From Mizuhopecten yessoensis (lineage: Eukaryota): a stretch of 64,000 nucleotides of DNA. Of this stretch, positions 28,421-59,165 are shown one piece after another (position 1 is the stretch's first letter; each line of letters opens with the position of its first letter). The position numbers were made by a program, and so were the translations under genes. The notes below the pieces were generated by a model. That model was not told the DNA's origin and made no database searches. It worked only from the letters and a program-made list of their open reading frames with translations. Where the stretch lies: NCBI RefSeq assembly GCF_002113885.1, contig NW_018407390.1:2725587-2789586 (forward strand), read 5' to 3'.

Positions 28421-31400
28421 TTGCTTTATTTAATTCTGTTTGAGTTTTAATTTGTTTTTTAAATATGTCAATGTTGAAAATAGTAAACTATGAAGAATTG
28501 GCAACGCGTTATATTGTGGGACTGTTGGAAATATAAATGTTCCATTGCTACAAAAACGTGTCCTGAAGCTGGATAACAGTTCCCCAGAGCTTTAATTAAG
28601 ACGTTGTTGTTAGGTTGGGGGTTTTTTGAAAGAGAGAAAAAAACCATGCTATTCAGATCTTGCTAATAATTACACCGAGGTTACCAACTAAGGCCGTCAC
28701 TGTGATCCTCTGATTGCAGCCGTGGTCCTTTAATCTATTTCTTTTAAATTGAGATGCTGTTTGCAACGTTCATTACCATCTTAAAGCGCGGTCACCGTTT
28801 CATCAAACGAACCAGTGTAAAGTACCAATCCATGTCTATGTAAAAGAAACTTCCAACGGCATAATCAGGCGTCTGTGGAACACATGTAGCTCATTTTGTG
28901 TAAACTTAGGGGGAAACGGTTGTCTAATTCGTATGCATATATTAACCTATGCTGTGTGGTCGAGTAGTTATCAGGCCAAGTGATTTACATTTGGTGATTC
29001 TGGATGCAATTTACAATAACAACAAATTGATATTTAGAAATATTTCTGATCATGCTTCCCATACTATTATATAGTTATTTTCTGCAAATGCCGGTTTCTT
29101 AATGTTAATATAACAAGGTTTTAACTTATGTAAATCATATATTCTTAATGAAAACCGACATCTTATATTATAACTTCTTATACAAAATGAAGCGAAGAAT
29201 CACTAAAAAGGAATCAGGAGCAGTAACGTGATGATTCATGTCAATTAAAAAATTTCTTGCAAATAAAAAACTTCTAAAAAGGCAATCCTATCTACAGTCG
29301 AGTCTACATTGTTGTGTTTAAGCGTGGTGCTAATAAGACAATCATTCCCGTGTGATACATGATATACTTCTCCTAACGACAAAAATTAGACACATTGACG
29401 TCAGTCATACACAAGGGAATCACGTGATAGGTCGTTAAGAACATTTAACGTTATATTCATGCTATTCGGGTCTTTTCATCAAGCTACATATAAACTTATA
29501 TAGATTGATGTTAAAGGTCATGAAGCTAAAGGCATGAGTGATAAGCATCATAAAAACAGATATAGCTGTATGAATCAAACTCCTAAATGTTAATATTTTA
29601 AGTTATAATATTGGCTCAATTTAAAGTTTTATCTCAAAACAGTTAACGTTTTTGCTTGTAGACAATACGGAAAAATATTTCTATGATGGTGTTTGATTGT
29701 ACTATGTATGTTTAGCGAAGCTGGAAGGACGATTGTCATGTGTTCATTTAGAAATATGATGAATGAAATGATCGCATGTGTCTGGTAATGAGTAAATAAC
29801 TATCACATGATTTATGGTTATTATTGATTTTAAGGTGATTGAAGTCGGCGTTGTAGTCAAGATTCGATCACATTAATTAGCTTATTAATAGTCAGTCAAT
29901 TATCAGGCTAACTTGCTAAATATTTACCTGCCACACAACCCGACAGACTTTGAACCTGTCTGTCGCTCTCAGTAATTTGATAATGAGAAATATACTACAC
30001 CAAGTCAATTTGTCATGCTATATCAGAAAAATGTTAGAAGGCAGGTGGGTATAACACAGTGATCATCACAGACTAACTTGTTTATAACAGTGACTTATCT
30101 TATATTTATCACTTCAATTTTAACTTGTAAAATGATGTACTCGACCGACTTGCACTTTAGTACGTACTACTCCACACCTACACTATACCACTGCTATATT
30201 GTCATAGCGACCGACTTCCACGGTGTATATATGTACTGTATATGTATCGAACTTTAGTTCGTTTCTTGTATTTCACACACAATTTGAGCAAATTCACAAG
30301 TGTACAAACAGAAACAGGTTATGGAAACAAGCGTAGAGCATAGAGCTTATATGTATCCACTTTTGTAGCTTTGATAAATTGTTGAATTTGTTGAAATTTA
30401 CAAATTATATCATGCAACATTTTCAAGAACAGAATACAGATATACTCATTCATATTTAAACACATCATATTCACAAATCATATTATAAAGCATTTTCAAA
30501 AACTACTCGTGTACTTTAATTGTGTGTTATGGCATTATATTTACATGTGCATGGCATTGTCACTATAAAGCCTCTTTGAAAGCTGTGTCGTTGATGGGAC
30601 TTTAATTACCATGCATCACGAGACACAATTCTTAGCGTATTAATACAACACTGACCGGAACTACAATATCCAATATAAATAAACATGACGGCTGCTGAAA
30701 TATCGCTGGGCATTGTGAGATTTGACAATGTCATTGTAAATTTATGTGCAAAATAAAAAATAAAATGTAAAACAATTTTATTACAACGAAAACAAGACCA
30801 AGGTTTGCAATACGTACAAAATGCACATCGGTTAAAATCATCAATGCCGGCAATGGAAACAATTTTAACGCTCATGCAATTTATCAGAATTATCGTCTGT
30901 TACACTGCACTGATCAACAGGGGTTCGTTACAAATGTCTGAAATACACATATTCAACGGACCTACTGACACATATGTTACAGACCTACTGATATGAGTCA
31001 CAGCACACTAACGTTTCAGACATTTGTAACGAACCTGTGCTCCGTCACAAGATCACTCACTTCAAACGCTATCAGTTTCACGCGTCTCGCATCCAAGGTT
31101 CCTCAGTTTCTGTCGACATGTCAAATAACGAGGATGACTGGTGTTAGGTTCCCATACAATCAACAAATAAATTCACGCCTGGATTCCTCAGAAAATGAGC
31201 AAAGAGAAAAGTTCGAATTAACTTCCAAAAGTAACTCCCTCGTGGAGGGCAAGGTCGGATTTACGGTGTTCACTGTATTTGTCCATGCGTGAAATTTGTT
31301 CCGGGGGAAAAACGAAACAATTTCAAATCTAACTTTCAGCTCAGAGTTCTATTGATAAACTTAAATCACCCTATAGAGATATCATACGCAATTGTATTTG

Positions 31401-35094: not shown

Positions 35095-36465
35095 ACATTA
35101 TGTTACATTGTATAAACGTGATGCTACATTGTATCTACGTTATGTTACATTGTACCTACGTTATGTTACATTGTATCTACGTGATGTTACATTGTATCTA
35201 CGTTATGTTACATTGTATCTACGTTATGTTACATTGTATCTACGTTATGTTACATTGTATCTATACGTCATGTTACATTGTATCTACGTTATGTTACATT
35301 GTATCTACGTTATGTTACATTGTATCTACGTTATGTTACATTGTATCTACGTTATGTTACATTGTATCTACGTTATGTTACATTGTATCTACGTTATGTT
35401 ACATTGTATCTACGTTATGTTACATTGTATCTACGTTATGTTACATTGTATCTACGTTATGTTACATTGTATCTACGTTATGTTACATTGTATCTACGTT
35501 ATGTTACATTGTATCTACGTTATGTTACATTGTATCTACGTTATGTTACATTGTATCTACGTTATGTTACATTGTATCTACGTTATGTTACATTGTATCT
35601 ACGTTATGTTACATTGTATCTACGTTATGTTACATTGTATCTACGTTATGTTACATTGTATCTACGTTATGTTACATTGTATCTACGTTATGTTACATTG
35701 TATCTACGTTATGTTACATTGTATCTACGTTATGTTACATTGTATCTACGTTATGTTACATTGTATCTACGTTATGTTACATTGTATCTACGTTATGTTA
35801 CATTGTATCTACGTTATGTTACATTGTATCTACGTTATGTTACATTGTATCTACGTTATGTTACATTGTATCTACGTTATGTTACATTGTATCTACGTTA
35901 TGTTACATTGTATCTACGTTATGTTACATTGTATCTACGTTATGTTACATTGTATCTACGTTATGTTACATTGTATCTACGTTATGTTACATTGTATCTA
36001 CGTTATGTTACATTGTATCTACGTTATGTTACATTGTATCTACGTTATGTTACATTGTATCTACGTTATGTTACATTGTATCTACGTTATGTTACATTGT
36101 ATCTACGTTATGTTACATTGTATCTACGTTATGTTACATTGTATCTACGTTATGTTACATTGTATCTACGTTATGTTACATTGTATCTACGTTATGTTAC
36201 ATTGTATCTACGTTATGTTACATTGTATCTACGTTATGTTACATTGTATCTACGTTATGTTACATTGTATCTACGTTATGTTACATTGTATCTACGTTAT
36301 GTTACATTGTATCTACGTTATGTTACATTGTATCTACGTTATGTTATATTTTATCTATATTATGTTACATTGTATCTACGTTATGTTACATATTATCTAC
36401 GTTATGTTACATTGTACCTACGTTATGTTACATTGTATCTACGTTATGTTACATTGTATCAACGT
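35095..36465. repeat. 21-bp minisatellite, about 65 copies, nearly homogeneous
   Basis: Unit tatgttacattgtatctacgt; variants occur only at the array ends. Confidence 0.99.
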
Positions 36466-36657
36466 TATTGTCCCCTACAGGTTCGATGAAAGATTAGTCC
36501 TCCTGTAGTTCACTTCATGTCGTAAAGGGTTACTCGTTTTGGGACATCCACCGGAATCCGGTTTTTATCTGTTTTGTCAGAAGTCATGGAAGAAATCAAA
36601 ACTGATACGCCGATCTATTGCAACTCTTTGATTTATGTATTTTCTTGCTCACTTCTC

Positions 36658-37585: not shown

Positions 37586-38066
37586 TTTTCATATGATTCA
37601 AATATTCATTTTTAGGTTCATTAATGTTAAGGATTTCCCATTTCTTTCATGTCCACCATCTTGGAAAATCATTACAGTTTTATGATGATGTCATCGATGT
37701 CGGCACAAAATCGCTTATGTCGTTATGATTGTTTCTTGTTTTTCATCAAATTCTGGTTGGATTCTCTTTCTGATGCACTTTCTGATTCGTAATTAGTTTG
37801 TGTTTTGGCAAAGCTATAGGCATTCGAAAAGGGACATTTTTTTGTGTGTATATGCACAAAATAGGAATAATATGCGAATTCGTGAATATAAATACCCAAA
37901 GATATCAACAATTCTATAGGCAAACCATTATATTTTCGTGTCCCAAATGTCTAGAACAGGATTAGCCTGTCTAAAAAGTTAGTCACAAAGGCAAGCATTA
38001 CTAACTTTGACAGGGAAAATTGTGAATCAGTAAATGGAAAGTTCACTCTTCTTGGTCTTACAAAAC

Positions 38067-41000
38067 ATCATTACACGTCATAACAGTGATCACCATTAAA
38101 CGTCATTACAGTGATCATCATTACACGTCATGACAGTAATCAGTATTACAGGTCAATACAGTGATCATCATTACACGTCATTACAGTTATCACCATTAAA
38201 CGTCATTACAGTGATCATCATTACACGTCATTACAATGATCATTATTACACGTCATTACAGTGATCATCATAACACGTCATTACAGTGATCATAATTACG
38301 CGTCATTACAGTGATCATCATTACACGTCATTACAGTGATCATCATTACACGTCATTTCAGTGATCATCATTACACGTCATTGCAATGATCATCATTGAA
38401 CGTCATTACAGTGACTATCATTACACGTCATTACAGTGATCATCATAACACGTCATTACAGGGATCACCATTACACGTCATTACAGTGATCATCATTAAA
38501 CGTCATTACAGGGATCACCATTACACGTCATTACAGTGATCATTATTACACGTCATTACAGTGATCATCATTACACGTCATTACAATGATCATCATTACA
38601 CTTCATTACAGTGATTACCATTACACGTCATTACAGTGATCATCATAGTGATCATCATTACATGTCATTACATTGATCATCATTACAGGTCATTACATTG
38701 ATCATCATTACATGTCATGACATTGATCATCATGAAAGGTCATTACATTGATCATCATTACAGGTCATTACAGTGATCATCATGACATGTCATTACAGTG
38801 ATCATCATTACACGTCATTACATTGATCATCATTACAGGTCATTACAGTGATCATCATTAAAGGTCATTACAGTGATCATCATTAAAGGTCATTACAGTG
38901 ATCATCATAACAAGAATTACAGTGATCATCATTACACGTCATTACAGTGATCATCATTACAGGTCATTACAGTGATCATCATTAAAGGTCATTACAGTGA
39001 TCATCATTAAAGGTCATTACAGTGATCATCATAACAAGAATTACAGTGATCATCATTACACGTCATTACAGTGATCATCATTACAGGTCATTACAGTGAT
39101 CATCATTACAGGTCATTACAGTGATCATCATTAAAGGTCATTGCAGTGATCATCATTAAAGGTCATTACAGTGATCATCATAACAAGAATTACAATGATC
39201 ATCATTACACGTCATTACAGGAATCACCATTACACGTCATTACAGTGATCATCATTACACGTCGTGACAGTAATCAGTATTACAGGTCAATGCAGTGATC
39301 ATCATTACACGTCATTACAGTGATAATCATTACAGGTCATTGCAATGATCATTATTACAGGTCATAACAATGATCATCATTACACGTCATTACAGGAATC
39401 ACCATTACACGCCATACAGTGATCATCATTACACGTCATTACAATGATCACCATTACCCGTCATAACAGTGATTATTATTACACGTCATTACAGTGATAA
39501 TCATTACACGTCATTACAATGATCATCATAACACTTCATTACAGTGATCACCATTACACGTCATTACAGTGATCATCATATTGATCATCATTACATGTCA
39601 TTACAGTGATCATCATTACAGATCATTACAGTGATCATCATTACACGCCATTACAGTGATAATCATTACACGTCATTGCAATGATCATTATTACAGGTCA
39701 TAACAATGATCATCATTACACGTCATAACAGTGATCATCATTGAACTTCATTACAGTGACTATTATTACACGTCATTACAGTGATCATCATAACACGTCA
39801 TTACAGTGATCATAATTACGCGTCATTACAGTGATCATCATTACACGTCATTACAGTGATCATCATAACACGTCATAACAATGATCATCATAACACGTCA
39901 TTACAGTGATCATCATTACACGTCATTTCAGTGATCATCATCACACGTCATTTCAGTGATCATCAGTACACGTCATTACAATGATCATCAATATACGTCA
40001 CTACAGGGATCACCATTACACGTCATTACAGTGATCATCATTACACGTCATTACAGTGATCACCATTACAGTGATCACCATTACAGTGATCATTATAACA
40101 GGCCATTTCAGTGATCATCATTACAGGTCATAAAAGTGATCATTATAAAGTGATAATCATTACACGTCATTGCAATGATCATTATTACAGGTCATAAACA
40201 GTTATCACCATTAAACGTCATTACAGTGATCATCAGTACACGTCATTACAATGTCATTACATTGATCATCATTACAGGTCATTACAGTGACCACTATCAG
40301 TGATCATCATTACAGGTCATTACAGTGACCACTATAACAGGCCATTACAGTGATCATCATCACAGGTAATTACAGTGATCATCATTACAGTGCAGTGATC
40401 ATCATTTCACGTCATTACAGTGATCATCATCACAGGTAATTACAGTGATCATCATTACAGGTCATTACAGTGATCATCATTGAACTTCATTACAGTGACT
40501 ATCATTACACGTCATTACAGGGATCCCCATTACACGTCATTACAGTGACTATCATTACATGTCATTACATTGATCATCATTACAGGCCATTACAGTGATC
40601 ATCATCACAGGTCATTACAGTGATCATCATTACAGGTCATTACAGTGATCAATTCCTCTAAATGCTGAACGTTAAGCAGGAAACAATCACTACCATTAAT
40701 AAGGACTTTGGTATGTCCCGGCCTGGGAACACAACCCATTGCCTTCCTCACTGGGGCGAACGCTAAACATTAAGGTCAAATGCGAGGTGTTGCCAAGCAA
40801 GGCGCTAGGAAATAAAAGGCAGTTAGAAGTAGACACAAAGATAAAAATTCAATATATTGCTATGGGTGCAGCAGAATTATTTTGGTCGTTGTGTCCCCAA
40901 ATAGAGGACACTAAAGTAAATCCCCAAATCACCATTACAGGTCATTACAGTGATAATCATTACAGGTCATTACAATTATCATTATTACAGGCCATTACAG

Positions 41001-43110
41001 TGATCACCATTACAGTGATCATTATAACAGGCTATTACAGTGTATGATATAACAAGCCATTACAGTGATCACTGATGATCACTGTAATGGTGATCACTGT
41101 AATGGCCTGTTATAATGATAGCTGTAATGGTGATCACTGTTATGGCCTGTTATATTGATAACTGTAACGGCCTGTTCTNTGATCACTGTTATGGCCTGTT
41201 ATATTGATAACTGTAACGGCCTGTTATATTGGTAACGGTAATTGCCTATTATAACGAGACCTGTAATGGCCTGTTAAAATGATCGCTAACATGTCATTAC
41301 AGTTACATTATAACAGGCCATTTCAATGATAATTATAACAGGCTATTACAGTGATTAATATAACAATCCATTACAGTGATCATCATTACAGGTCAATACA
41401 GTGATCACCATTACAGTGATCACCATTTCAGTGATCACCATTACAGTGATCATTATAACAGGCTATTTCAGTGATCATCATTACAGGTCATAAAAGTGAT
41501 CATTATAAGAGGCTATTACAGTGATGAATATAACAAGCCATTACAGTGATCACCATTTCAGTGATCATCATTACAGGTCATTACAGTGATCACCATTACA
41601 GTGATCATTATAACAAGCCATTACAGTGATTAATATAACAGGCTATTACAGTGATTAATATAACAAGCCATTACAGTGATCACCATTACAGTGATCATCA
41701 TTACAATGATCATTATAACAGGCTATTTCAGTGATCATCATTACAGGTCATAAGAGTGATCATTATAAGAGGCTATTACAGTGATAATTATATCAGGTCA
41801 TTACAGTGATCACCATTACAGTGATCATCATTACAGTGATCATTATAACAGGCTATTTCAGTGATCATCATTACAGGTCATAAAAGTGATCATTATAAGA
41901 GGCTATTACAGTGATAATTATATCAGGTCATTACAGTGATCATCATTACAGTGATCATCATTACAGGTCATTACAGTGATCACCATTACAGTGATCACCA
42001 TTTCAGTGATCACCATTACAGTTATGATTATAACAGGCTATTACAGTTATCATCATTACAGGTCATAACAGTGATCATTATAACAAGCCATTACAGTGAT
42101 AATTATAACAAGCCATTACAGTGATCACCATAACAGTGATCATCATTACAGTGATCACCATTACAGTGATCACCATTTCAGTGATCACCATTTCAGTGAT
42201 AATTATAACAGGCTATTACAGTGATTAATGTAACAAGCCATTACAGTGATCACCATTACAGTTATCATTATAACAAGCCATTACAGTGATTTATATAACA
42301 AGCTATTACAGTGATCATTATAACAGGCTATTACAGTGATCATTATAACAAGCCATTACAGTGATCATCATTACAGGTCATTACAGTTATCATTATAACA
42401 AGCCATTAAAGTGACCACTATAATAGGCTATTACAGTGATTAATATAACAAACCATTACAGTGATCACCATTACAGTGATCATCATTACAGGCCATTACA
42501 GTGATCATTATAACAGGCCATTTCAGTGATCATCATTACAGGTCATTACAGTGACCACTATAACAGGCCATTACAGTGATCATCATTACAGTGATCACCA
42601 TTTCAGTGATAATTATAACAGGCTATTACAGTGATCATTATAACATGCCATTTCAGTGATCATCATTACAGGCCATTACAGTGATCATTATAACAGGCCA
42701 TTACAGTGATCATTATAACAGTGATAATTATTACAGGCCATTACAGTGATCATCATTACAGGTCATTACATTGATCATCATTACAGGTCATTACAGTAAT
42801 CATCATTACAGGTCATTACAGTGATCATTATAACAGTGATCATTATAACAGGTCATTTCAGTGATCATTATAACAGGTCATTACAGTGATCACCATTACA
42901 GTGATCATTATTACAGGCCATTAGAGTGATCATCATTACAGGTCATTACAGTGATCATCATTACAGGTCATTTCAGTGATCATTACAACAGGCCATTTCA
43001 GTGATCATTTTAACAGGCCATTACAGTGATCAACATTACAGTGATCATTATAACAGGCCATTACAGTGATCACCATTTCAGTCATCATCATTAAAAGTCA
43101 TTATAGTGAT
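38067..43110. repeat. 25-bp (15+10) CATTACA-based satellite of about 5 kb, with a unique island (40652-40926) and an inverted block (41076-41290)
   Basis: Unit cattacagtgatcat+cattacacgt/caggt; the period of 25 is seen at 38281 and 38306. Confidence 0.97.
40652..40800 (-). mobile_element. 5' part (tRNA head plus Meta-like core) of a SINE
   Basis: Reverse complement gtttagcgttcgccccagtgaggaaggcaatgggtt..ggccgggacataccaaagtcctt..aatggtagt..aacgttcagcatttag aligns with 10040-10142. Confidence 0.75.
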
Positions 43111-46100
43111 TGGTTACGTTTGTTAGTCTCTCTTTCCTTCCTATTGTTTTGCATCCAGTTCAGGTACCTTTTGTTTTTACTGCTAATACCTTTATTCTGT
43201 TTTACAATATTACACAAGGCTTGGCTTGATTATTACAAACAACATACGCTAGCGATCGTTTCATATCAAATATCTGAAGATGTACCAGGCAATATCACTG
43301 TATTTTATACTACTTCTGGGTTCATTTCTCGGGGCAGACAGTTTCTTCTGATGTTCAATGATACGACAGTGCTTGCTCCTTATGATACTAAACGTATACT
43401 CGCAAAGCATAGAAAGACTGGCTAAGGAACGTCATGTCATCCAGTAAGTTCTTAAATGTTAATAATGTGTTCATGAGCTCAATAACGCAAAATAAATTCA
43501 AACAAAATTTGCAAGTGCGTGGTCACATAAACAAGAAGCATAGATTTATCACAGCGTTTACTCACAGGGACAGAATTGAGCTCAAAATTAATACGTAGCT
43601 ATTACTAAGGACACATCGGAACTAAAATGAGCCACTTTAAATAACAGAAGGAGGATCCCTCTGGGAAGGTTCATGGGTTCTCCCTTACTGTGATGACACG
43701 CAGTGCTATTTTTTAGTCCACATTGGAGGTTTCAAATTATAAAGCTCCGAATTATTGGGTTTTTTTTAGAACTTTTTACAGTTGCGTTGAATGTGGTTGA
43801 TTCATTTTACTTCGAAAATCACTAAAATAGCGGTGGTTGTTTTATAAAATACATGGTGCTACGTATGTTATGCGCGAGTGCGATCACACATCGATCTCGT
43901 AGTGAACAGCAAGGCTGTATATATATATAGTTGATCACTCAGAATTAAATCAGTTAAACATTGTCCAGGACTATTTGTTTCCATTTTGCACTCAAAAACA
44001 GTGATCAAATGTCTGTCACCTGCCATGTGTGAAAAAATCGTTCCATATATGACAGAAAGTGTCAAATATTTTAACAATTCAATCGGTCAATACAAGGTAG
44101 GCGATGTGCTGAAGGATAGGAAAGAGATAAAAGAAGAAGAAAAGACAAAAAGGAAAGAAATAACACAATTATTTATGAAATAGTATTAATGTCCTCACTC
44201 GATTTGAGATGAAACCGGTCAAGATCAGCCAACTGGGAAGTGGTTTGTCGCTTGTGTTGAAATTGCCACGTCCCTTTTAGACGTTCAATATATGAGATGT
44301 GGGTTCTGTGTGTGTGTAATGTGATTCCATGACGTACATAACTGGTCTATCTATCATTATCGACGTATGTACTGTTGTCGATGTAACACCGTTAACAGTA
44401 AGGCAATACACTAGATGCGGTGTTCTTCAGTCTATTTCTTTCTGTGAAAAGTTGAAAGTTTACTTTACGATAAACTGAGGAAAATGAAGATGGATACCTT
44501 AGCGTGTTTGTAGGATCATTCCTCACATACGCATGTATATTGCATTTACATGGCATTATCACTAAATAAAGCAACCATATGAATGATGCAAACAAAGTGC
44601 TAAAAATGCCGTTGCCCGCCAGATTGTTGACGTCATCAGTATAATGACATCGCAATTGTGAAGTTCCATAACGGAGAATGATGGTCACATGATACGCAAT
44701 ATTTACATTATAGCAATAATCTGTGTTGCTTTCAGATATACCATCCTTAACAGGACTACATACAAATATAATAATTCATAAAACATACAGTAAAACTTAT
44801 ATGCTGCCATCTTATGATCGGCGAGTTTTTACGTTGTAAATGATTTGGTGATACATGACAGAATAAAGTAAACAGAAGATAATGGTTTTACTGTATCTCT
44901 CTAGAAGCATTGACTTTCTATTTAGACATGTAAACGTAGCAGTGTTTCACGCCTAACACAAACCGACATACAAACTATGTGTGTTTGGATGTTTTAAAAA
45001 GGGTGTTTAAAAATATTTTCCTATTCAAACCAATTGCTGAATTTACTTCCAACGAGTTCCAATGTATGCTAGGCCTTATTCAAAGGGATGCTGTGTACAA
45101 AAAAACAGTTTCTCATTAGTTTACTATGCTGACAAGTGTCCCTTGCAGGTTTAGGGAAATAATCGGGTAGCGGACTTCTGAGAATCTAAAATTGATCTGT
45201 TTCCCCAATCGCACACTTTATCACGATAATTTTCTCTGTTGTGTACTCTTTTTGGCAGTTTTTCCTAGGAACAAACAAACAAATAGCGCTTGCTCCATCT
45301 TAACACCTGCTAAGCGGTTGATCTGTTTCTCTTTATTCATTTGTAAAATTGATTTTCTGAATCATTTAAAAGGATACCGTCACATTCAAATTGCAGAACA
45401 CACATCTCACTAATACATGATGGACATCCGACTTCTAATCACAGTTCGTTGTGCAATTGAAATACCCGTGTGGCGTTTGCATTCGTTTCTGCTTTCGACG
45501 CCACGCTGCTAGCAATTACCATCACTAAGGGAAGGAGAATGCCTTGTTGAGTGTCCTTACATGGAATCGTCACAGTTGCAGTTCATGGCCTGAAACAAAA
45601 TCGCATATGCATACCTACTGAGCCGTTTTTAGCATCGGATATGTCTGGGTTTTTTCTGTCCAATGGCGAACTGTATAACCCCACATTTATAATTATTATG
45701 ATGTGATATAGTTTTCATATATTGTATTTATTAACTCGTGACTTAGTAATTAATGACGCAATATCAAAATGAGTATATATTATATATTCTATGATGAAGA
45801 ATCTCACAGTTACCGAATCCAACGATGGACTACAACCAAATGAGACACAAACTACAGCTTGAAGAAACTAAACATATATTATAAATATATCGGAGAACGG
45901 GAAACAGTTAAGAGGGATGGGGTCTGTTTGTGTTTAGTGACCACCTATTTTCCATCAAGCAAGCTAGTGTTATCAACAGGAATGTTAATTACTTGTGCAA
46001 AGTTTGAAACGTATCAAGGCTCATACGAGCCAACACTGCGTTGTAAAAAACAACAAAACACAAATTGACAAAAATAAACAAACAACTAAGAACAGAAAAA

Positions 46101-46193
46101 AAATCTTTAATGTTCATAGACATTTGAAGCGCCCACTGGCAACGGAAAGCCATGGAGAAATGTACGTGCTTGTTTTGAGACCATAAATCTGTT

Positions 46194-46199
46194 TTTATT
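46194..46199 (-). terminator. Candidate AATAAA poly(A) signal of the neuropeptide-like gene
   Basis: First minus-strand AATAAA I found after the stop at 46521, about 320 nt downstream. Confidence 0.45.
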
Positions 46200-46396
46200 C
46201 GCAATTTTTTTTTAATTAGTAATCAGAAATGGTTTGCACAAATTGATGAATACTTATAAATTGTATAAAAACAACGCAGTGGATATATAAATCTTAAGGT
46301 AGTTGGAACAAACGATAACCTGGTCTTAAATATTGAAATAGATATGTCAAACCTCAAATTTATAGCGTTTTCATGAAGGTAGTTCTAGATTTGTAC

Positions 46397-46523
46397 TCTT
46401 TATGTGATTTCTGTCCATATTTGGGTCCGATTGGACACCACACAAAGTCACTTCTTTAATTCTTTATGCGATGTGGTGTCCACATTTGGGTCCGATTGGA
46501 CACCAAACAAAGTGAATTCCTTA
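46397..46523. repeat. 64-bp tandem duplication at the start of the 3'UTR
   Basis: tctttatg..gtcca.atttgggtccgattggacacca.acaaagt occurs at 46397 and 46461. Confidence 0.9.
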
Positions 46524-46639
46524 CTTCCGACCAGCAGCTCCGAAGCGCATATAGAGAGGACTGTTGATGTTGCTGCCATACCCGTACATAGCCATAATCC
46601 GAGAAAACAAGTCATTCAAATCCTGACGTTTGTTCATTT
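46521..46639 (-). CDS. Terminal coding exon of an amidated neuropeptide precursor (tentatively QSGamide-like)
   Basis: Strong acceptor tattatttttatttattccAG| entered in phase 1. Translation (E)MNKR-QDLNDLFSRIMAMYGYGSNINSPLYMRFGAA-G-RK-stop: dibasic site, N-terminal Gln, Gly amide donor and terminal dibasic residues. Confidence 0.85.
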
Positions 46640-49287
46640 CTGGAATAAATAAAAATAATACATATATTCAGTACAGCAAATCGGAGAGTGATCTTGATAT
46701 TATTTTGTCTTACTTCTTTCCTTTAGTATTTCTAGGGAATCTTACAGAAACTTTTTTTTGCAGAATTATCTCTTTTTAATGCCTGTAAGAAAATTTCAAT
46801 ATATTTGGAAATAATGCCTGAAATACGTCACAACTTGTATGTCAACAATAATACATAAATTAATTAATTAATTATTATGCATTAAGTATTCGAAAAATAG
46901 TTTAATACAAGTATATCAATACAAATATAAATATATCATTTATATCCTGTTTTCAAATTCTCTGTTCCAGTTTTGGCGAAGATTATCAGTTATACGTTCT
47001 ACATCTGTTACAGAGCGTATTTCTGTCCTGTGATAAATAGATATATATAGATAGATACATTGTGATGCAATGATAAGTACAGCAGACCGATATTGGTCTC
47101 TGCAAACGTCTCCTTGTCGGCGTATACGGTAAAGAATCCCCAATCACAAAAGTCACATTCTACAATCATACAGTCGGATACAGCAGGGCTATTCTTAACA
47201 GGAATACTTGTTGGTAATTTTCTTACTTTTAATGATATTAATCATCTGTTTTTAATGAATTACGTAATGTCGATAAACCTGTATTTTAATTTACGTTGTA
47301 CATATATGTTCATTGTATGACCTTAAAAGTACGAAATAAAGATGGCGTAAATAATGATATGGCTACATTACTTTAACATGTGGTTTGGTTACCTTTGACT
47401 CTCCTTTCACATAACTTTGAAGGGGACTTTTAATTAATGCGTTGTTATTTTTACATTATGCTCATCTAAATTTTAGATAGATACAATTGTATATTACGTT
47501 TTATTTATGTTTTTGCAGCATTATATATTACTTTAATTGTCAATTTGATTCGTTGTAATTTTCATGTGTCACCTACTACGCTTTCCGGAATTGATGTAAC
47601 AAATATGTTACTTTGCCTCGCATACAGATATTAAACAGGTTCGTGACAATTATTACGACGTACCTTATATGAAAACATAGTTCTGTACTATAATTTGCAA
47701 AAGCTTTCCTTTTTATTATTTACGTGGAATTGATCTAAGCAATAATATAAGATATTTAAGATACTTGCCAAGTAAAATTTTACCATTATTCTGTATAGGA
47801 AATATGCAGATTTAAAAGTGTCTTCTTTGAAGGGATACTCACCATGAGGCATGAATTAACATTTGTAAAGTAATACAATACATTGGGGCATAAACCACAA
47901 GGAAAGGTTTACGTTGAGACAATTAAAAATAGTCGAGGAGACTATGTCTTTCGGACGAGTTTTCGTCTCATAAATCATCGACTCCAACTGTCATGTGGTT
48001 CTAGGTCACTTTCTCAAAGCCAGAGGATAACGTCAAAGAAACCAGAAGGCACACAAATGACCAAGGTAAAGAAATCAAAATAGGATATTTCCCAACACGA
48101 TCCTTGGGCGACCATATCAACAGTCACCTCTCGAAAACCTTGCTATGTTAGTTTGTCAGCCGTCTATATACATATGTCTCGGAAACTGTTATACAGGTAT
48201 CGTATGCAAGGACTTGAATACCGAATCATATTCGAAATGAAAACAACGTAAGCTGAGAAATCAGAGATTTCACTATTAAGGAAGGGAATGTTCACAATGG
48301 AAAAAATGAAATTGTCACGGTAAATAAATAGTCATCCCTTTCTTGTCAGAGTTGGTCAGTTAAGTCCAAAGTAGGCGATTGATGTAGGCTCAGTACGGTT
48401 TATATGATCGACTTGGCCAATGGGTTTTTTTTTATCTTAAAAAGTTAAAGAGTCAGAAGGAAATAAAATATGTTAGCCAGCACAGAAGTTCAATTTGTTC
48501 ACATGGAAATGCGAACACTCTACTGTTAATTCTTGCCACCAAAACCCAACAAGGAAAGTGTCAACATGGAATATCATTCACACGATTTCATATTCAGTAT
48601 ACTTCATCTTGGTGTTTTTCATGTGCTTCTCAATAGTTAACAGCCATGTATTGGTATCGCTGTCCGCTGTTTGGGGGAATAAGCTCCTGATAGAGTGGTC
48701 AAGTCAAATGTTCTGATTAAAAAGGAACATATTTTAAGAGAGGACGCTCAGGCTTCAAAATACAGAGTCCACTTCTCGATAGTAGCGTCATAATACGACT
48801 GTAGCGCTAATTCAATGGCACCAGGAATGGAAGCTAGGAGTTTGGACAATAGCTAAGTAACTAGTTGTTCAGAGAGGTGCCCTTGACGTTTCGGAATGAA
48901 TGCAAACGAGGCAGGTCAATTTTCTTACCACTATCTGGTACATTGTTTGTGAAATGACTGTAATACAGAAGCGTGATAAGCTAACATTTCGTTTTTTCAA
49001 CTTTTTGGGGAAAACAGAAGTTCTTTGTTATCACGCTTTGGTGTATGATATTACATATAATAATAATGGCAATTTACCCCTTGTCATTAAATGTTGCGTT
49101 AGCGGAATGTTGTAACTATTAATATGCAAAGGTTTAAGAATAGAATATGTGTTATGGTTTGTCAGTGATTTTATGAAGTCTCCAAAATAGTTTCCAAATG
49201 TCATCGATCAACATTTTCATTTGAAACCTCTTTTCTTGTTCGTAATACAGAGACTGGAAATGAATATAGCGTACTTCGAACATGCTA

Positions 49288-49797
49288 GACAACCAGTGGT
49301 TCCTCTGGAGATCTCTGTGGAAACGAACATTTTGGACAACCAGGTGGTCCTTCTGGAGTTCCTCTGTGGAAACGAACATTTTGGACAACCAAGTGGTTCC
49401 TCTGGAGATCTCGGTGGAAACGAATATTTTGGACAACCAAGTGGTTCCTCCGGAGATCCTCTGTGGAAACGAACCTTTTGGACAAACTAGTGGTTCCTCC
49501 GGAGATCCTATGTGGAAACGAACATTTTGGACAACCAGTGGTTCCTCTGGAGTTCCTTTGTGGAAACGAACATGGTGGACAACCAGTGGTTCCTCTGGAG
49601 TTCCTATGTGGAAACGAACATGGTGGACAACCAGTGGTTCCTCTGGAGTTCCTATGTGGAAACGAACATTTTGAACAACCAAGTGGTTCCTCCGGAGTTC
49701 CTCTGTGGAAACGAACATGGTGGACAACCAGTGGTTCCTCTGGAGTTCCTATGTGGAAACGAACATGGTGGACAACCAGTGGTTCCTCTGGAGTTCC
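49288..49797. repeat. 43-44-bp minisatellite, about 11-12 copies, inside the neuropeptide gene intron
   Basis: Unit gacaaccagtggttcctctggagttcctatgtggaaacgaacat(tttg/ggtg). Confidence 0.96.
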
Positions 49798-51240
49798 TTT
49801 TTAAATTATTGTTTCATACACAGAATATTATTTCTTCAACATTTTCACTAGATTTTCGCAATTTGGTTGTGGTTCAGTTTAGAAGATTTTCTAATATTAG
49901 CCAATCCCGTAGTGCTTCCAATCAAATAGTAAGATTAAATGTTTAGTAAATGATGTCCATCTATTTGTACGTCCTATATGATCACAACACTCTAACGTAC
50001 AGTATCAAAGCTTACACTAAACTCAGACACGTAAAAAGCGGAAGTTTATGTATTATGCCGCCCGTTTGCTTTGCATAAAAGGTTATAGCAGTCGGATGAA
50101 TGCCGCGGTAAAAAGACGTTAGATGTATATACTGGGGGAAGCGAGTATTTACAATTTAGCCGATGAAAACATTGTTACGGATACTCTGGAAAATTACCAA
50201 ACCATAATATTGTTCATAACATAATATCACATGGATGCCAGGTATTCTCTTCCAGATTAATTAAAACAGTTTTAACCATCTGTATATATAGCTAATCCTT
50301 TTAGACGGATTATTGATCGTGTATCTCTTTCTGTTACTATAATTAAATATTTCAGTTAACACAAAGATTTCTAATGCTTTATAACACGCTCTTGCTGGTT
50401 ATCTGACTGGATAAAGGTACATATATACATGTAGCTACTCTCTACTGTTAATCATATTTTTCACGAATATTATCGATCGTTCTTGTTCGCGATTATAATC
50501 AATTCACAAAAAAAAAACACCGAACATTTTCTCTTTCGGCAGAAACATTCACAAGTTATGTTCCTGATTGGTTTTCCTCACGACCTGACGCTAATATACA
50601 TTGTAAAATCATGTGACTTAACGCTAATCTAGCGATATAATCGTGATTGAAAGCAGTCGTTACCTAATTATACTGGCGGCAAATGATATCAAATACTTGT
50701 TATTGTCCTAAGGCTTGGTTAATGCTATACATTTTTAATTGGAAAAGGTCTAATCGGTTTTACGAACTTCGTCAAAAGCGTGCTAATATATCGGCGAATA
50801 CATAATCGAATCGGTATTTTTTTTATAGTCAATTAATGAATAAAGCTCAAACCATCACACATAAAGATAAGATTAGATGTTTTCCTGTAATTTTGTGACC
50901 AATCGTTATTTCGAGAACAAAAGCTTTGACCTAAATAAAACTCGAGTGAGAAAAAATAATTCTTTAAAACAGAATTGAAATATGATAAATATGTAAATCG
51001 AACATCTTCAAGGTCAATGATAAAATCTTAAATTCATGTTGAAATAATAACAAATGCATCCGAATATATGAAGAAATGTAAAATACTTTAGTTCGTGTAA
51101 TATGATATTTTCTGAAAATTCATGAACGATTACATGTACGTGTAATGTTAACTTTTAAGGGTAAATACACATAGCAAGAAACAGGCGTTACATTGTAATA
51201 ACAAGTACAAGTGTAATACAAATATATGGGGTTTACCTAC

Positions 51241-51340
51241 CTTGCCTTGGAATGGTGTACGCCTCAGACAACTCAATGAACAGCATCGCTAACACAGGTG
51301 TGGCGAGCAATAGCCAGGTAAAGAATAAACATTTAACCAT
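51241..51340 (-). CDS. First coding exon (signal peptide) of the neuropeptide precursor
   Basis: MVKCLFFTWLLLATPVLAMLFIELSEA|YTIPRQ + G, 100 nt, ending at a phase-1 donor AAG|GTAGGT. The phase is compatible with the exon at 46639. Confidence 0.8.
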
Positions 51341-51497
51341 GCTTCCCCTAATTAGAACAACGCTAAATCTACCTGTAGTTTGAACCGGTTTACTTGTTTA
51401 AGGTAGTACACAATTGGCTTTTACGTAAAGTCTTTTACGTAAAGTCGTAGCAAAGGTTGAGCAGTGAGATAATGGGATGAATTTATCAAAGTAGTCC

Positions 51498-51504
51498 TTT
51501 TATA
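51498..51504 (-). promoter_or_regulatory. TATA box of the neuropeptide gene
   Basis: Minus strand cggcaTATAAAAgg, about 160 nt upstream of the ATG, with pyrimidine-rich Inr-like sequence about 30 nt downstream. Confidence 0.55.
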
Positions 51505-52797
51505 TGCCGATTGTATTTTATTTCATTCAAAGGTCTCACTACGCGCACTGCCGGAATTACATCGTCTGACGCGCGTGATTCTTCAAATAGAAGCTGGCCT
51601 CCACCACAGACGATTTACAACCGTTCATGAATATTTATGAGTTCCTTAAACGAGCACTCTTTGCTGAAGATGTGTCGTCTGTTCAGTAAATGGTAGTAGC
51701 ATTAACTGGTCAGAATCAAACGAAGGAAGCTATAACTTCCAACATCTACCCTGTCAACAACATTGGCAGAGGTTCCGAAAACAGCTTTGGTCAAATGAAA
51801 CCAAACTGCCATTAAGGCATCCCGTAGGGAGATTGAATAGGAATTTACAAGTAGTAACAAAATACTGGGACGAAAGGCTGTTATCAACTTCAGTTAAATG
51901 AAAAGCTAAAAACCCGAATCTGTAGTGCCATGTGCTCTAGTTATCGATTGGCCTTGTGTTTTGGTAATTTTGAGAACGATACAAATACAAACAATTGTTA
52001 TAGTGTATCTACATGAAATAGGTTTTTAAAGAATCGAAACAAACGTTAGCAATCAAATTAATTATTCATGAACTCTGGAGAAGAATATAAAGGTTGTTAA
52101 TAGATTAAGCGAATCAAACTGTTCAATAAAGGTCTTTGTACGGCATTCCCCACGGTGTCGCCGCTGGAGATGTGTGTAATTGTGTGAATAACAAAAAAAC
52201 AACAAAAAAACTATCGTCATCGACGCAGTAGCTATAGCAATAACAACTACTTCAATGATGACTGACAATTAGGAGCACGTGTTTATGAATTCTAAGAAAA
52301 TAACAATCAGTGCTTGCATTTTATATTATACACTGTATTTTATATTATACACTGTATTTTATATTTTATCCCGCCTCTGACAAAAATGAAGCGCCTCGTC
52401 CAATACAGGTTTTTTCGTGGACCCCATATATTTCCGTATACCCCCTGCAAGTAACTAATAATACACTGTATTTTATTTTATACATTGTATTTTATATTAT
52501 ACACTGTATATTGTAAAAGATCACTATGGTATACGATTTAAGAAAATGTTTTTTAATATTTCAGGTAAACCGTGTCAGAATAATTAAGTTTAAACAAGAA
52601 CTCAGGAAACTAACTTTCTTTGTGTGGTGTGTTCCAAGGCGATGGAATGCAGATAGAAAGTACTTTATTACAATGATAGTTTTATCTCTCTTTTTTTACT
52701 GACAGGATGATGGATACCTGGATGCATTGAGAAAACAAATGTCACTGTTCGGAGAACCAGATTTGAGACACCAGTATTCATACTCATTGTTGCTTTT

Positions 52798-56559: not shown

Positions 56560-59165
56560 TATATTTATACAATTAATACAACACAAACATTGATCTATAA
56601 ATCTGAGGATAGCCCATGAAAGCTCGAAAGCTTATTTCCAATGGGGTCCATGTTATATTGATCACGGGAAAGATTTTGGTAGGAGGGAATGATTGACAAC
56701 ATATTATTAACTTTATTGTCAGTACCTACAGTAATTCCGTAATGACTATATAATCTAAGAAACACACATATATATGTTCAGGTTTAAATAGTAACCCCAA
56801 CTTAAAATATGTAACGTGACTTTCTAAGTATTTCTAAATAACAAAAATAATACGGTACAGATGTCGTCAGCACGTGGATTGCGATGACACAACGTTTGTT
56901 TTCTTAGGGTTGGGGATCCCCCTACCAGCAAAGTCTATTTGTTTTGTGCCACCGCAATCACATATAATTGTGTTATCAGCATGAATTTTGAAATTTAAAA
57001 GCGAGATGTTTCTTCACTGCTGCCTTAAATGCATACATGGATTTTATACCCTTGATTTTGTCAGGCAGACTATTCCAGTCATGGATCCCGTTAAGATAAA
57101 AAGTAGCGGTATCTTTCCCTTTACATGGTGGAACAACAAAATTAAAAAGACATGATCGTGTGTTATGCTGATGAACACCTGACACTTTTATGAAGTTTAG
57201 GTTTAAGTAGGATGGACATTTTCCATAAAAAATCTTGTTCACATGATTAAGTCTTAATTGTTTGACTCTATATTCTATATTTAACATATTGAGCTTTGAC
57301 AGCTCAGTGGGAGTGATACTCGTTCTGGGTTCTAATTGGCTAATAAATCGGACAACTTTATTTTGTAAAATCTGTAATTTGTTCTTCATTTTCTTGTTTA
57401 ATCCTGAGTTCCACGCGGAGCATGCATAATCTAGGTGACACTGTATAAGTGCAGAACATAAACTTTGTCTGGTTTTTGTAGTTAGACATTTACTTTGTCT
57501 GTATAAAAATTTCAGTCTAGAATTAACTTTCTTTACGATGTTTTCTACTATTTCTTCGCCAGACATACAACAATCTATATTAGCTCCAAGATATTTCACA
57601 GATTTTGTTGATTTGATGGTATGATTGTTTGCGACACTTTCAAAATGATCAATTTGATTTAATTTTCTTTTCGTTCCAAATAGTATGCTCTCTGTTTTAC
57701 CAAAATGCAACGAAAGCTTATTATCCACTAACCACTCTGCACATGATTCAAGTACAGCACCAAGTTTCATGGAAATTATTTCTGGGCTTTTAGGTGCGAA
57801 AAGGATAACACTGTCATCGGCATATAATAGTAATTTGCATTCTCCATCAATGCTGATTGCCATATCGTTGACTTAGCATAAGAATAAAAGAGGGCCTAAA
57901 ATACTACCTTGTGGTACCCCACCCGTAATAGTAGCTGGGTCCGAGTAGATATCGTGAATTTTGACTGTCTGATGTCTGTTACTCAGATATGATCTAAACC
58001 AATTTACAGATGTCACACCCATCATTTTCAACTTGCCACACAGAATGTCATGGTCAACCGTGTCAAAAGCTTTGCGTAGTTCTAGAAGCAACATGCCAGT
58101 GTAAAGACCTTTACTAGTATTACATTTAATATGGTCAGGCAAATGTATAAGACAGGTATCAGTGGAGTATGCCTTCCTAAACCCTGATTGATATTCATAA
58201 AGCATGTTGTTGTTGGTTTTTATCAGAAATGCTTCCATCTGTGAATACACCGTTCGTTCTGATAATTTAGAGACAATGCTCAATATACTTACTTGTCTGT
58301 AATTACCAGTATCCAGACTGCTTCCTTTTTTATAAAGAGGTTTGACGCGGGCAGATTTCATATCATCTGGAAATTTCCCTTCTATAATTGACATGTTAAT
58401 TAAAAACGTGATAGGAATTTGTTCAAGACTTCAGCACCATCTTTCAAAAACTTGGCTGGGATTTCGTCCAGTCCTGTACTTTTACTCTGATTTAGTTTAC
58501 AAAGTTCCTTAAAGATATACTCCTCTGATACCTGACGGAGAACAAATTTCTTCTCTCTTGGATTTATTAATTTGTAAAAATTCGTTTAAAGAGCTGAACC
58601 TATGGAGTACAACTTCTTGGCTGGAGGTAACTCTTGTACCAATTTGGAAGCTACATTTGTAAAATAGTTATTAAAATGATCTGCTACACCTTTGTGGTCA
58701 TGACAGTTTTCTCCATCTATATTTAAAACAATATTTGAATCTCCTTTTGCTTTATTTGTATAGCCCAAATCTTTCAGATGTTGCCATAATTTCTTTGAAT
58801 CATGTTTGTTTTTTTCTATTTTTTCCGAAAAGTAATTTGACTTAGCATCTTTTACATCCCTTTGTACTTTGTTTCTAATGGTACAGTAAGACATGTAGTC
58901 CTCATTATTTTTACTAGCTGTGAATAAATTCAGGAAACCATCTCTGTGTTTAATATTTTCTAAAATCTCTGGTGTAATCCATGGTTCGCTCCGTTGTTTT
59001 ACTCGTACCTCTTTCACAGGTGTATCTGTGTCTAAAACCGTCATAAAAATGGTTTTGAAGGCTACCCATGCACTATCTACATCCTTTGCATTAAAACAGT
59101 CTTCCCAATTTGCCCTAGTTAAGCCAGCCCTGAAATTTTCTTTGCTGTATGTTTTTATGTTTGAA
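56560..59165 (-). mobile_element. 5'-truncated L2/Crack-like LINE; ORF2 disrupted
   Basis: Complete RT motif series (KSTGLD, PLYKKG, QSGFR, KAFDTVDH, GVPQGSILGPLLF, YADD, KYLG, WNSLP). In-frame stops at 58586 and 57873, a frameshift near 58420, and a 3'UTR hairpin aagctttcgagctt near 56620-56633. The 3' boundary is approximate. Confidence 0.92.

What the first reader, a model, noticed from the sequence alone, without database searches (positions are those of the whole stretch)
46521..51504. Hidden two-exon neuropeptide precursor encoding a 31-aa pyroGlu/amidated peptide
Seen: joining 51340-51241 to 46639-46521 (canonical GT-AG, matching phase 1, 4.6-kb intron) gives 72 aa: MVKCLFFTWLLLATPVLAMLFIELSEA-YTIPRQEMN-KR-QDLNDLFSRIMAMYGYGSNINSPLYMRFGAA-G-RK*. 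A TATA box lies upstream and AATAAA downstream. Neither exon is in the ORF track. Established: signal peptide + KR + Gln start + Gly-dibasic end is the substrate pattern for prohormone convertase, glutaminyl cyclase, carboxypeptidase E and PAM. Inference: the mature product is pQDLNDLFSRIMAMYGYGSNINSPLYMRFGAA-NH2. It contains an internal YMRFG, but no basic residue follows, so it should not be released as an RFamide. From memory it resembles lophotrochozoan QSGamide-type precursors. If so it is an atypical '-GAAamide' variant; otherwise it may be an undescribed family.
Basis: partly seen in the sequence, partly recalled or inferred. Interest (0 to 1): 0.88.

Follow-up and report, generated by a model that had tools for sequence, protein, structure and literature searches.

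The report
Second scallop SYGAGamide-family neuropeptide gene
This is a real, spliced and conserved but unannotated Yesso scallop gene for a small secreted peptide; it is a sister copy of the scallop neuropeptide SYGAGamide (oyster WGAGamide), so it adds a member to a little-known bivalve family and does not found a new one.

Summary
The joint 51241/46639 is present in assembled contigs of two independent public runs.

The genome is Mizuhopecten (Patinopecten) yessoensis.

The peptide exon is not QSGamide-type. Profile comparisons with the scallop's own QSamide and PXXXamide exons are null. It also lacks that family's cysteines, its P-x-x-x-amide end and its C-terminal exon.

It is a paralogue of the last exon of the published SYGAGamide precursor (Zhang et al. 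2018), which corresponds to oyster Cragi-WGAGamide (Réalis-Doyelle et al. 2021). That exon lies 63 kb away on the same strand. The two share the intron phase, the KR site, the L-N-x-L..R..A core and the end RFGA[AG]-G-dibasic-stop.

Argopecten irradians has both exons at the same spacing. Its peptide exon is 74% identical. The last 14 codons carry 7 synonymous and no non-synonymous changes. The N-terminal Gln is Tyr there, so the pyroGlu is not conserved.

No database protein holds the peptide, and it is absent from the 2018 scallop catalogue.

Argopecten gene models splice the same signal exon onto the SYGAGamide exons, so the two may form one complex locus.

Verdict: a new member of a known orphan family, of moderate interest.

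The parts
51498..51504 (-). TATA box (TATAAAA) upstream of the transcript
   Evidence: Read directly. It is conserved, with its flanking TAAAATAC, in Argopecten. The longest contig starts at 51436.
51341..51436 (-). 5' UTR, minimum extent
   Evidence: The X8 contig covers 51436-51241. There is no upstream ATG. The ACAGGTAGATTT motif is conserved in Argopecten.
51241..51340 (-). Exon 1 coding part: start codon, signal-type leader, YTIPRQ and one base of the split codon (phase 1)
   Evidence: The hydrophobic core is residues 4-21 and a (-3,-1)-rule site lies after SEA. It is 55% identical to the Argopecten leader exon L008:20291-20392 (E 1.8e-8).
46640..51240 (-). Intron, 4601 bases, GT..AG, holding a 48-base minisatellite at 49277-49798
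   Evidence: It is skipped in contigs of X1 and X8. The repeat is shown.
46521..46639 (-). Exon 2 coding part: E-MNKR, the 31-residue peptide, amidation Gly, RK and the stop codon
   Evidence: The paralogue aligns at 47-50% identity. The Argopecten orthologue aligns at 74% identity, E 3.5e-15. dN/dS is about 0.11, with 0 non-synonymous changes in the last 14 codons.
46320..46520 (-). 3' UTR, minimum extent
   Evidence: Contigs of X8 and X10 end at 46320 and X1 at 46376. Candidate signals are ATTAAA 46460-46455 and TATAAA 46364-46359. It does not align with Argopecten (38% identity).
16229..16364 (-). First coding exon of the neighbouring published SYGAGamide gene (LOC110455033), also phase 1. 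Its other exons lie left of the window at G000:C4063, about 2,712,9xx and 2,709,334-2,709,453.
   Evidence: tblastn of P0001 residues 1-47 matches at 96% identity. Sequence; middle and last exons.

Best explanation
The two exons form an expressed, evolutionarily conserved transcript of the Yesso scallop that encodes a 72-residue prepropeptide. It is the second member of the bivalve SYGAGamide/WGAGamide neuropeptide family in this genome.

It arose by duplication of the terminal peptide exon. It sits head-to-tail about 30 kb upstream of the SYGAGamide gene.

Proposed working:
- The leader is removed, most likely after SEA.
- A prohormone convertase cuts after KR.
- A carboxypeptidase removes RK.
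- The exposed Gly is converted to a C-terminal amide.

The product would be a 31-residue peptide ending ...SPLYMRFGAA-NH2. In this species its N-terminal Gln could cyclise. The peptide has an N-terminal amphipathic helix and an invariant amidated tail, and presumably acts on a still unknown receptor.

Shown: the splice, the transcript, the paralogy, the orthologue and purifying selection. Inferred: every processing step, neuronal expression and receptor action.
For: - Splice: the joint is in two independent runs, and the exon-only word share is seen in 14 runs. The genome has no retrocopy.
- Paralogy: BLASTP E 4e-9, 18/38 identical. Both exons have a phase-1 acceptor two bases before x-NKR. 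Both lie on the same contig and strand.
- Identity of the paralogue: P0001 is named SYGAGamide / LOC110455033, Mizuhopecten yessoensis. The family is described in PMC5996578, where mass spectrometry found peptides starting right after the KR site. The oyster counterpart Cragi-WGAGamide is in PMC8398477.
- Argopecten orthologue: same acceptor, stop directly after GRK, diverged flanks.
- Selection: synonymous changes exceed non-synonymous ones (Fisher p 6e-6). The last 14 codons have 7 synonymous and 0 non-synonymous changes.
- Promoter and donor are conserved.
- AlphaFold2 on the 5-sequence alignment gives a helix over residues 3-18 at pLDDT 75-82. The hydrophobic moment is 0.5-0.7 there.
Against: - No peptide from this precursor has been seen. 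It is not among the 63 scallop precursors of the 2018 ganglion transcriptome and peptidome study, so ganglion expression may be low or absent.
- The 'RNA' label of the holding runs is a guess, and their tissues are unknown. The one raw RNA run laid gave no reads, which is no test.
- SignalP could not be run.
- Even for the paralogue, only N-terminal fragments were detected by mass spectrometry, not the amidated end.
- The middle of the peptide is poorly conserved.
Confidence: 0.78

Rival explanations
1. This is not a separate gene but one isoform of a single complex SYGAGamide locus of about 67 kb. The locus would have two alternative signal-peptide first exons (51340 and 16364) and two alternative, paralogous terminal peptide exons. 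Promoter choice and last-exon choice would then decide which amidated peptide is made (RFGAA-amide or RFGAG-amide), as with calcitonin/CGRP.
For: Argopecten RefSeq isoforms X1-X3 (P0005, P0003, P0004) begin with the exon homologous to this gene's exon 1 and continue into the SYGAGamide middle and last exons. All junctions in both genes are phase 1, so the exons are interchangeable in frame. The exon order is colinear in both species.
Against: In Mizuhopecten only the exon 1 to exon 2 joint was seen, and the stretch laid did not reach the downstream exons. The published scallop cDNA and P0001 use the other first exon. The Argopecten isoforms are computed gene models that pass through an extra exon (L008:67021-67077). 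That exon was not found in the Mizuhopecten window or in the 10 kb upstream of the Pecten gene.
Confidence: 0.35
2. It is an atypical member of the QSGamide/PXXXamide (insect-PTH-like) family. It would then act on a PTH-type class B receptor.
For: By eye, the peptide resembles some non-Cys family members listed in PMC8557429 supplement 27: a helix directly after KR and a Y-G-x-G-S...P-L stretch as in Phoronis and Rhodnius. hhalign puts the two KR-helix registers together.
Against: BLASTP finds no alignment. hhalign gives probabilities of 1.7-1.9% against the scallop's own QSamide exon (L009) and PXXXamide exons (L010, L011). The peptide has no Cys pair, no P-x-x-x-amide end and no shared C-terminal exon, because the stop follows GRK directly. 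The scallop and oyster catalogues both list the two families separately.
Confidence: 0.06
3. The transcript is real but the product is processed differently, or is not a neuronal signal. It could be cut at single arginines into shorter fragments, or be a secreted peptide of a non-neural tissue with another role.
For: Mass spectrometry of the paralogue found only fragments ending at or just after an internal Arg. This precursor was not reported from ganglia. The oyster family member is barely expressed in visceral ganglia and was not detected by mass spectrometry.
Against: The strongest constraint is on the C-terminal 14 codons, including the Gly-dibasic-stop. That is what an amidated, receptor-binding tail predicts. 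The internal arginines lack a convertase context.
Confidence: 0.12

Closest known systems
SYGAGamide precursor of Patinopecten/Mizuhopecten yessoensis (MH045261, LOC110455033; Zhang et al. 2018, PMC5996578)
   Same: Same contig and strand. Same phase-1 intron just before x-NKR. Shared KR, the L-N-x-L..R..A helix core, and Y-x-RFGA-x-G plus a dibasic pair plus stop. The terminal exons are 47-50% identical.
   Different: No middle spacer exon: 72 against 117 residues. A different signal exon. The end is -GAA-amide instead of -GAG-amide. The middle part is different and two residues shorter. The start is Gln instead of Tyr. It evolves much faster (dN 0.21 against 0.011 versus Argopecten). It is not in any catalogue or protein database searched.
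Cragi-WGAGamide of Crassostrea gigas (XP_011447899; Réalis-Doyelle et al. 2021, PMC8398477)
   Same: That paper reports it as the oyster relative of the scallop precursor, with similar amidated C-terminal peptides. XM_011449597 is the oyster sequence paired with SYGAGamide in Zhang's Ka/Ks table. It is an orphan, 'mollusk-specific' family with no known function or receptor.
   Different: By its name, the oyster end is -WGAG-amide. That precursor is said to hold four peptides, two of them amidated. Its sequence could not be fetched here, so no alignment was made.
QSGamide / PXXXamide (insect PTH-like) precursors of lophotrochozoans (Thiel et al. 2021, PMC8557429)
   Same: A single long amidated peptide directly after a dibasic site, with a helical N-terminal half, encoded by one exon. 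That family also uses alternative paralogous peptide exons.
   Different: No Cys pair, no P-x-x-x-amide end, no C-terminal shared exon, and no significant sequence or profile similarity to the scallop's own members.
Calcitonin/CGRP-type alternative last-exon peptide genes (from established knowledge, not tested here)
   Same: If the one-locus reading is right, the choice between a proximal terminal exon with its own poly(A) site and distal exons would decide which peptide is made.
   Different: Here the two peptide exons are paralogues of each other. A shared transcript is so far supported only by Argopecten gene models.

Membership tests
SYGAGamide/WGAGamide (bivalve) | Precursor ends in an aromatic residue, then G-A-[GA], then an amidation Gly, a dibasic pair and the stop | tested here: met
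   RFGAAGRK-stop here. RFGAGGKR-stop in P0001, P0002 and P0005. RFGAAGRK-stop in Argopecten L008:24653-24769.
SYGAGamide/WGAGamide (bivalve) | Significant sequence similarity of the peptide exon to a named family member | tested here: met
   BLASTP E 4e-9 against the SYGAGamide last exon. tblastn of P0001 against the window gives E 2.8e-5. A search of the 988-Mb genome returns only these two exons.
SYGAGamide/WGAGamide (bivalve) | Same gene structure: the peptide exon is entered in phase 1, two bases before x-N/S-K-R | tested here: met
   Acceptor AG|AA ATG AAC AAA CGT here and AG|AC CAA AAC AAG CGA in L002. Argopecten has TAG|GG ATG GAC AAA CGT.
SYGAGamide/WGAGamide (bivalve) | Mature peptide detectable in nervous tissue | not testable with these tools
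   Only the paralogue's fragments YSLNDLIAR and YSLNDLIARL are on record. This peptide is absent from that study's files.
SYGAGamide/WGAGamide (bivalve) | Similarity to the oyster WGAGamide precursor itself | not tested
   The sequence of XP_011447899 could not be obtained by reference. The link rests on PMC8398477 and PMC5996578.
QSGamide/PXXXamide (iPTH-like) | Either two Cys in the peptide (QSGamide type) or a D-P-x-x-x-amide end after a G-H-G-type motif (PXXXamide type) | tested here: not met
   No Cys. The Pro lies nine residues before the amide. Compare the family sequences and the scallop exons.
QSGamide/PXXXamide (iPTH-like) | Peptide exon followed by a shared C-terminal exon after G-K/R-K/R | tested here: not met
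   The stop codon comes directly after GRK, in Argopecten as well.
QSGamide/PXXXamide (iPTH-like) | Sequence or profile similarity to family members of the same genome | tested here: not met
   BLASTP finds no alignment at E <= 100. hhalign gives probabilities of 1.7% and 1.9%. Family members from other phyla were compared by eye only, because they have no reference.
RFamide peptides | R-F-G followed directly by a basic cleavage site, giving a C-terminal RF-amide | tested here: not met
   RFG is followed by A-[AG]-G and then the dibasic pair in all five sequences.

The most novel reading that the evidence does not exclude
The 67-kb stretch is one transcription unit. Two alternative signal exons and two alternative paralogous terminal exons are combined to release either an RFGAA-amide or an RFGAG-amide peptide, with tissue-specific control. 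The whole [F/W]GA[G/A]-amide family would be a strongly diverged bivalve offshoot of the PTH-like QSGamide/PXXXamide peptides, which also use alternative peptide exons. That would give it a candidate class B receptor.
Probability: 0.08. Interest if true: 0.6.

Novelty: new member of a known kind. Interest (0 to 1): 0.36.

Why it matters
Bivalve neuropeptide catalogues are used to look for regulators of spawning, growth and settlement in farmed scallops and oysters. The SYGAGamide/WGAGamide family is an orphan, with no known function or receptor.

This finding adds a second, conserved ligand that the catalogues and gene annotations lack. It shows that the family signature is the amidated tail [F/W]-G-A-[G/A]-NH2 preceded by Y-x-R in scallops. 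It gives exact masses and exons for targeted peptidomics and receptor screens.

The possible sharing of exons between the two genes is a small but testable case of peptide diversification by exon duplication plus alternative last exons.

The result does not change any general principle.

Tried and rejected
- Database searches with the peptide exon gave nothing: the word-based search of 5.8 billion proteins and HMMER against 1.84 billion representatives. So no annotated protein holds this exon. The Argopecten copy is 74% identical and would have scored well above threshold.
- Pfam and PDB sequence searches gave nothing.
- Full-text searches for peptide motifs found no paper. The supplements of Thiel 2021 and De Oliveira 2019 hold no match, though some files were cut when stored.
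- The QSGamide reading was tested and rejected. A first degenerate pattern for the PXXXamide exon found nothing. A looser one found the exons.
- A chance ORF was rejected because of the splice and the orthologue. A retrocopy or DNA artefact was rejected because each exon occurs only once in the genome.
- The raw RNA run X24 laid no reads, which is no test.
- The Pecten maximus locus L007 reaches only 10 kb upstream of the SYGAGamide gene and holds neither exon. The expected place, 30-50 kb upstream, could not be fetched.
- The bacterial promoter and terminator scan is irrelevant to an animal gene.

Left out on purpose:
- Alignments with family sequences typed from papers, because they have no reference.
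- SignalP and NeuroPred, which are not available. A hydropathy and (-3,-1) heuristic on exon 1 alone was used instead.
Full report
**1. Observation**

On the minus strand, 51340-51241 opens with ATG (A at -3, G at +4). It encodes a 33-residue leader plus one base and ends at a GT donor. After an AG at 46641-46640, the stretch 46639-46521 completes the split codon. It then reads MNKR, a 31-residue peptide, Gly, Arg-Lys and TAA. A TATAAAA box sits at 51504-51498.

The only weak point is the poly(A) signal. The nearest hexamers after the stop are ATTAAA (46460-46455), TATAAA (46364-46359) and AATAAA (46199-46194). Assembled contigs extend to 46320.

**2. Is it transcribed and spliced?**

Eighteen public runs hold the exon-2 stretch. 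Fourteen of them, from about ten studies, hold a uniform 0.62 of its sampled words. That share is the exon part without the intron part.

I laid four runs on 45900-51700. Contigs of X1 and X8, from different studies, carry a joint that skips exactly 4601 bases between 46639 and 51241, with CT..AC ends on the plus strand. The X8 contig runs 51436->51241 and then 46639->46320 without any other difference.

The 'RNA' label of these runs is a guess. But the 988-Mb assembly holds each exon only once and has no intron-less copy, so the joined form is best read as mRNA. The one raw-read RNA run laid no reads at all and is no test.

**3. Organism**

The window is G000:C4063:2725587-2789586. A protein encoded on this same 3,787,003-base contig is named 'uncharacterized protein LOC110455033 [Mizuhopecten yessoensis]' and, in UniRef, 'SYGAGamide'. 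The genome is therefore the Yesso scallop.

**4. What the peptide exon is related to**

Searching the scallop's own genome with the exon-2 peptide returns itself and one other place. That place is 63 kb away on the same strand, 16 kb to the left of the window. It is an exon entered in phase 1 that reads x-QNKR, then a 33-residue peptide ending RFGAG, then Gly, Lys-Arg and stop.

The two exons are 47-50% identical (BLASTP E 4e-9). They share the position and phase of the intron, the KR site, the L-N-D-L..R..A-M-x-G core and the Y-x-R-F-G-A-x-G-dibasic-stop end.

This second exon is the last exon of the SYGAGamide precursor. Zhang et al. (2018, PMC5996578) described it as one of 13 'potentially novel' scallop neuropeptides. 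Two fragments that begin directly after the KR site were found by mass spectrometry in ganglia.

Its oyster counterpart (XM_011449597 / XP_011447899) was later named Cragi-WGAGamide. It was filed as mollusk-specific, barely expressed in visceral ganglia and not detected by mass spectrometry (PMC8398477). Neither paper nor its held supplements contains the peptide of the present finding.

**5. The neighbour**

P0001 residues 1-47 match 16364-16224 at 96% identity. The gene's middle exon (phase 1 at both ends) and last exon lie left of the window.

On the minus strand the order is:
- new exon 1 (51340)
- new exon 2 (46639)
- about 30 kb of spacer
- SYGAGamide exon 1 (16364)
- about 29 kb of spacer
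- SYGAGamide middle exon
- about 3.4 kb of spacer
- SYGAGamide last exon

**6. Conservation**

The SYGAGamide protein has orthologues in Pecten maximus (P0002) and Argopecten irradians (P0003-P0005).

The 110-kb Argopecten locus (L008) holds all the pieces in the same order. A homologue of the new exon 1 is at 20291-20392. A homologue of the new exon 2 lies 4.3 kb further on, at 24653-24766, with 74% identity (E 3.5e-15). After these come the SYGAGamide exons.

The Argopecten peptide exon keeps the AG acceptor, the KR and the whole tail N-S-P-L-Y-M-R-F-G-A-A-G-R-K, followed directly by a stop. The intron and the 3' flank do not align (51% and 38% identity, against 70% in the coding part).

Between the two species, the exon has dN 0.21 and a saturated dS of about 1.9 (Fisher p 6e-6). 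The last 14 codons carry 7 synonymous and 0 non-synonymous differences (p 4e-6). The TATA box, a 5' UTR motif, the ATG and the donor are also conserved.

The SYGAGamide peptide itself is identical in all three scallop genera (dN 0.011). The new copy is therefore the faster-evolving one, and its constraint is concentrated on the tail.

The N-terminal Gln is Tyr in Argopecten and in the paralogue, so pyroglutamate is not a family feature.

**7. One gene or two?**

All three Argopecten RefSeq isoforms start with the homologue of the new exon 1. They run, through an extra small exon, into the SYGAGamide exons. All junctions in both genes are phase 1, so such combinations stay in frame.

The locus may therefore be a single unit with two alternative first exons and two alternative, paralogous last exons.

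For Mizuhopecten this is untested. The extra Argopecten exon has no counterpart in the window or in the available Pecten flank. I give the one-locus reading about one chance in three. It does not change what the transcript seen here encodes.

**8. The QSGamide idea**

Thiel et al. (2021, PMC8557429) list QSGamide/PXXXamide (insect-PTH-like) precursors. By eye, a few non-Cys members (Phoronis, Rhodnius) share a Y-G-x-G-S...P-L stretch with the new peptide.

I located the scallop's own family exons with short degenerate patterns. The QSamide exon is on C2495. Two tandem PXXXamide exons are on C1094.

BLASTP finds no alignment with them. Profile-profile comparison of the five-sequence family alignment gives probabilities of 1.7% and 1.9%. 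The defining features are also absent: the Cys pair or the D-P-x-x-x-amide end, and a shared C-terminal exon after the dibasic site.

So this is not a QSGamide-type precursor by any test available here. A very remote common origin cannot be excluded with peptides this short.

**9. How it most likely works**

The leader has a hydrophobic core at residues 4-21. A site obeying the (-3,-1) rule lies after S-E-A, which is T-D-A in Argopecten. This is a heuristic on exon 1 alone, because SignalP was not available and the joined protein was not submitted anywhere.

Cleavage after KR is supported by analogy, because the paralogue's mass-spectrometry fragments start exactly there. Removal of Arg-Lys and amidation of the Gly follow from established knowledge of prohormone convertases, carboxypeptidase E and PAM. 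They fit the absolute conservation of Gly-dibasic-stop.

AlphaFold2 on the family alignment predicts a helix over residues 3-18 of the exon (pLDDT 75-82) and a poorly defined tail. The hydrophobic moment is highest in the first 11 residues.

The likely product is a 31-residue peptide. It has an amphipathic N-terminal helix and an invariant amidated tail, and a mass of 3513.66 Da, or 3496.64 Da with pyroglutamate. Receptor, tissue and function are unknown for the whole family.

**10. Novelty and score**

No protein in the two large collections holds this exon, although both hold the RefSeq proteins of Mizuhopecten, Pecten and Argopecten. No paper text holds its motifs. It is therefore an unannotated gene or isoform.

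It is nevertheless a clear paralogue of a family that was described in 2018 and 2021, so I class it as a new member of a known kind. It is useful for bivalve neuroendocrinology, and the exon-sharing question is neat. A specialist would not be greatly surprised. Interest is 0.36.

Noticed in passing
The gene's middle and last exons lie 13-16 kb left of the window start. All its junctions are phase 1.
   Followed up: yes
L008 (Argopecten irradians) 20291-20392, 67021-67077, 73163-73204: Argopecten RefSeq isoforms X1-X3 join the leader exon homologous to this finding's exon 1 to the SYGAGamide exons. They pass through an extra small exon and an internal acceptor inside the SYGAGamide first exon. 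The extra exon has no match in the scallop window or in the Pecten flank.
   Followed up: partly
P0001 against the supplement text of PMC5996578: The SYGAGamide sequence held as text for the 2018 paper differs from the genome-encoded protein at three spots: a missing Y near the start, P for D in the leader exon, and RFAGGKR for RFGAGGKR. These are probably typing or extraction slips. The genome, Pecten and Argopecten all read RFGAGGKR.
   Followed up: partly
window 49277-49798: A 48-base minisatellite (10.8 copies, 90% matches) sits inside the 4.6-kb intron. It creates the long repetitive ORFs on both strands at 49152-49946.
   Followed up: partly
window 25523-28427: A 24-base tandem repeat with 121 copies is strongly strand-asymmetric (GC skew -0.76, AT skew -0.66). 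It explains three long ORFs that have no Pfam match.
   Followed up: partly
window 35098-36468: A 21-base tandem repeat with 65 copies at 97% matches. Its translation gives a spurious Pfam 'insect antifreeze repeat' hit.
   Followed up: partly
window 38066-40651 and 41295-43110: Two large arrays of a related 25-base satellite (CATTACAGTGATCA core), together more than 4 kb.
   Followed up: no
window 56976-58394 (-): Two adjacent ORFs carry the two halves of a reverse-transcriptase domain (RVT_1, E 9e-19 and 1e-5). This looks like a broken retroelement copy.
   Followed up: no
G000:C1094:28100-30325 (L010, L011) and G000:C2495:160132-160154 (L009): These are the scallop's own PXXXamide exons (two in tandem, 2.2 kb apart, both starting KR-x-x-SDQRIAEL and ending at a donor after D-P-x-x-x) and its QSamide exon. 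The tandem pair suggests mutually exclusive peptide exons, as described for the oyster.
   Followed up: partly
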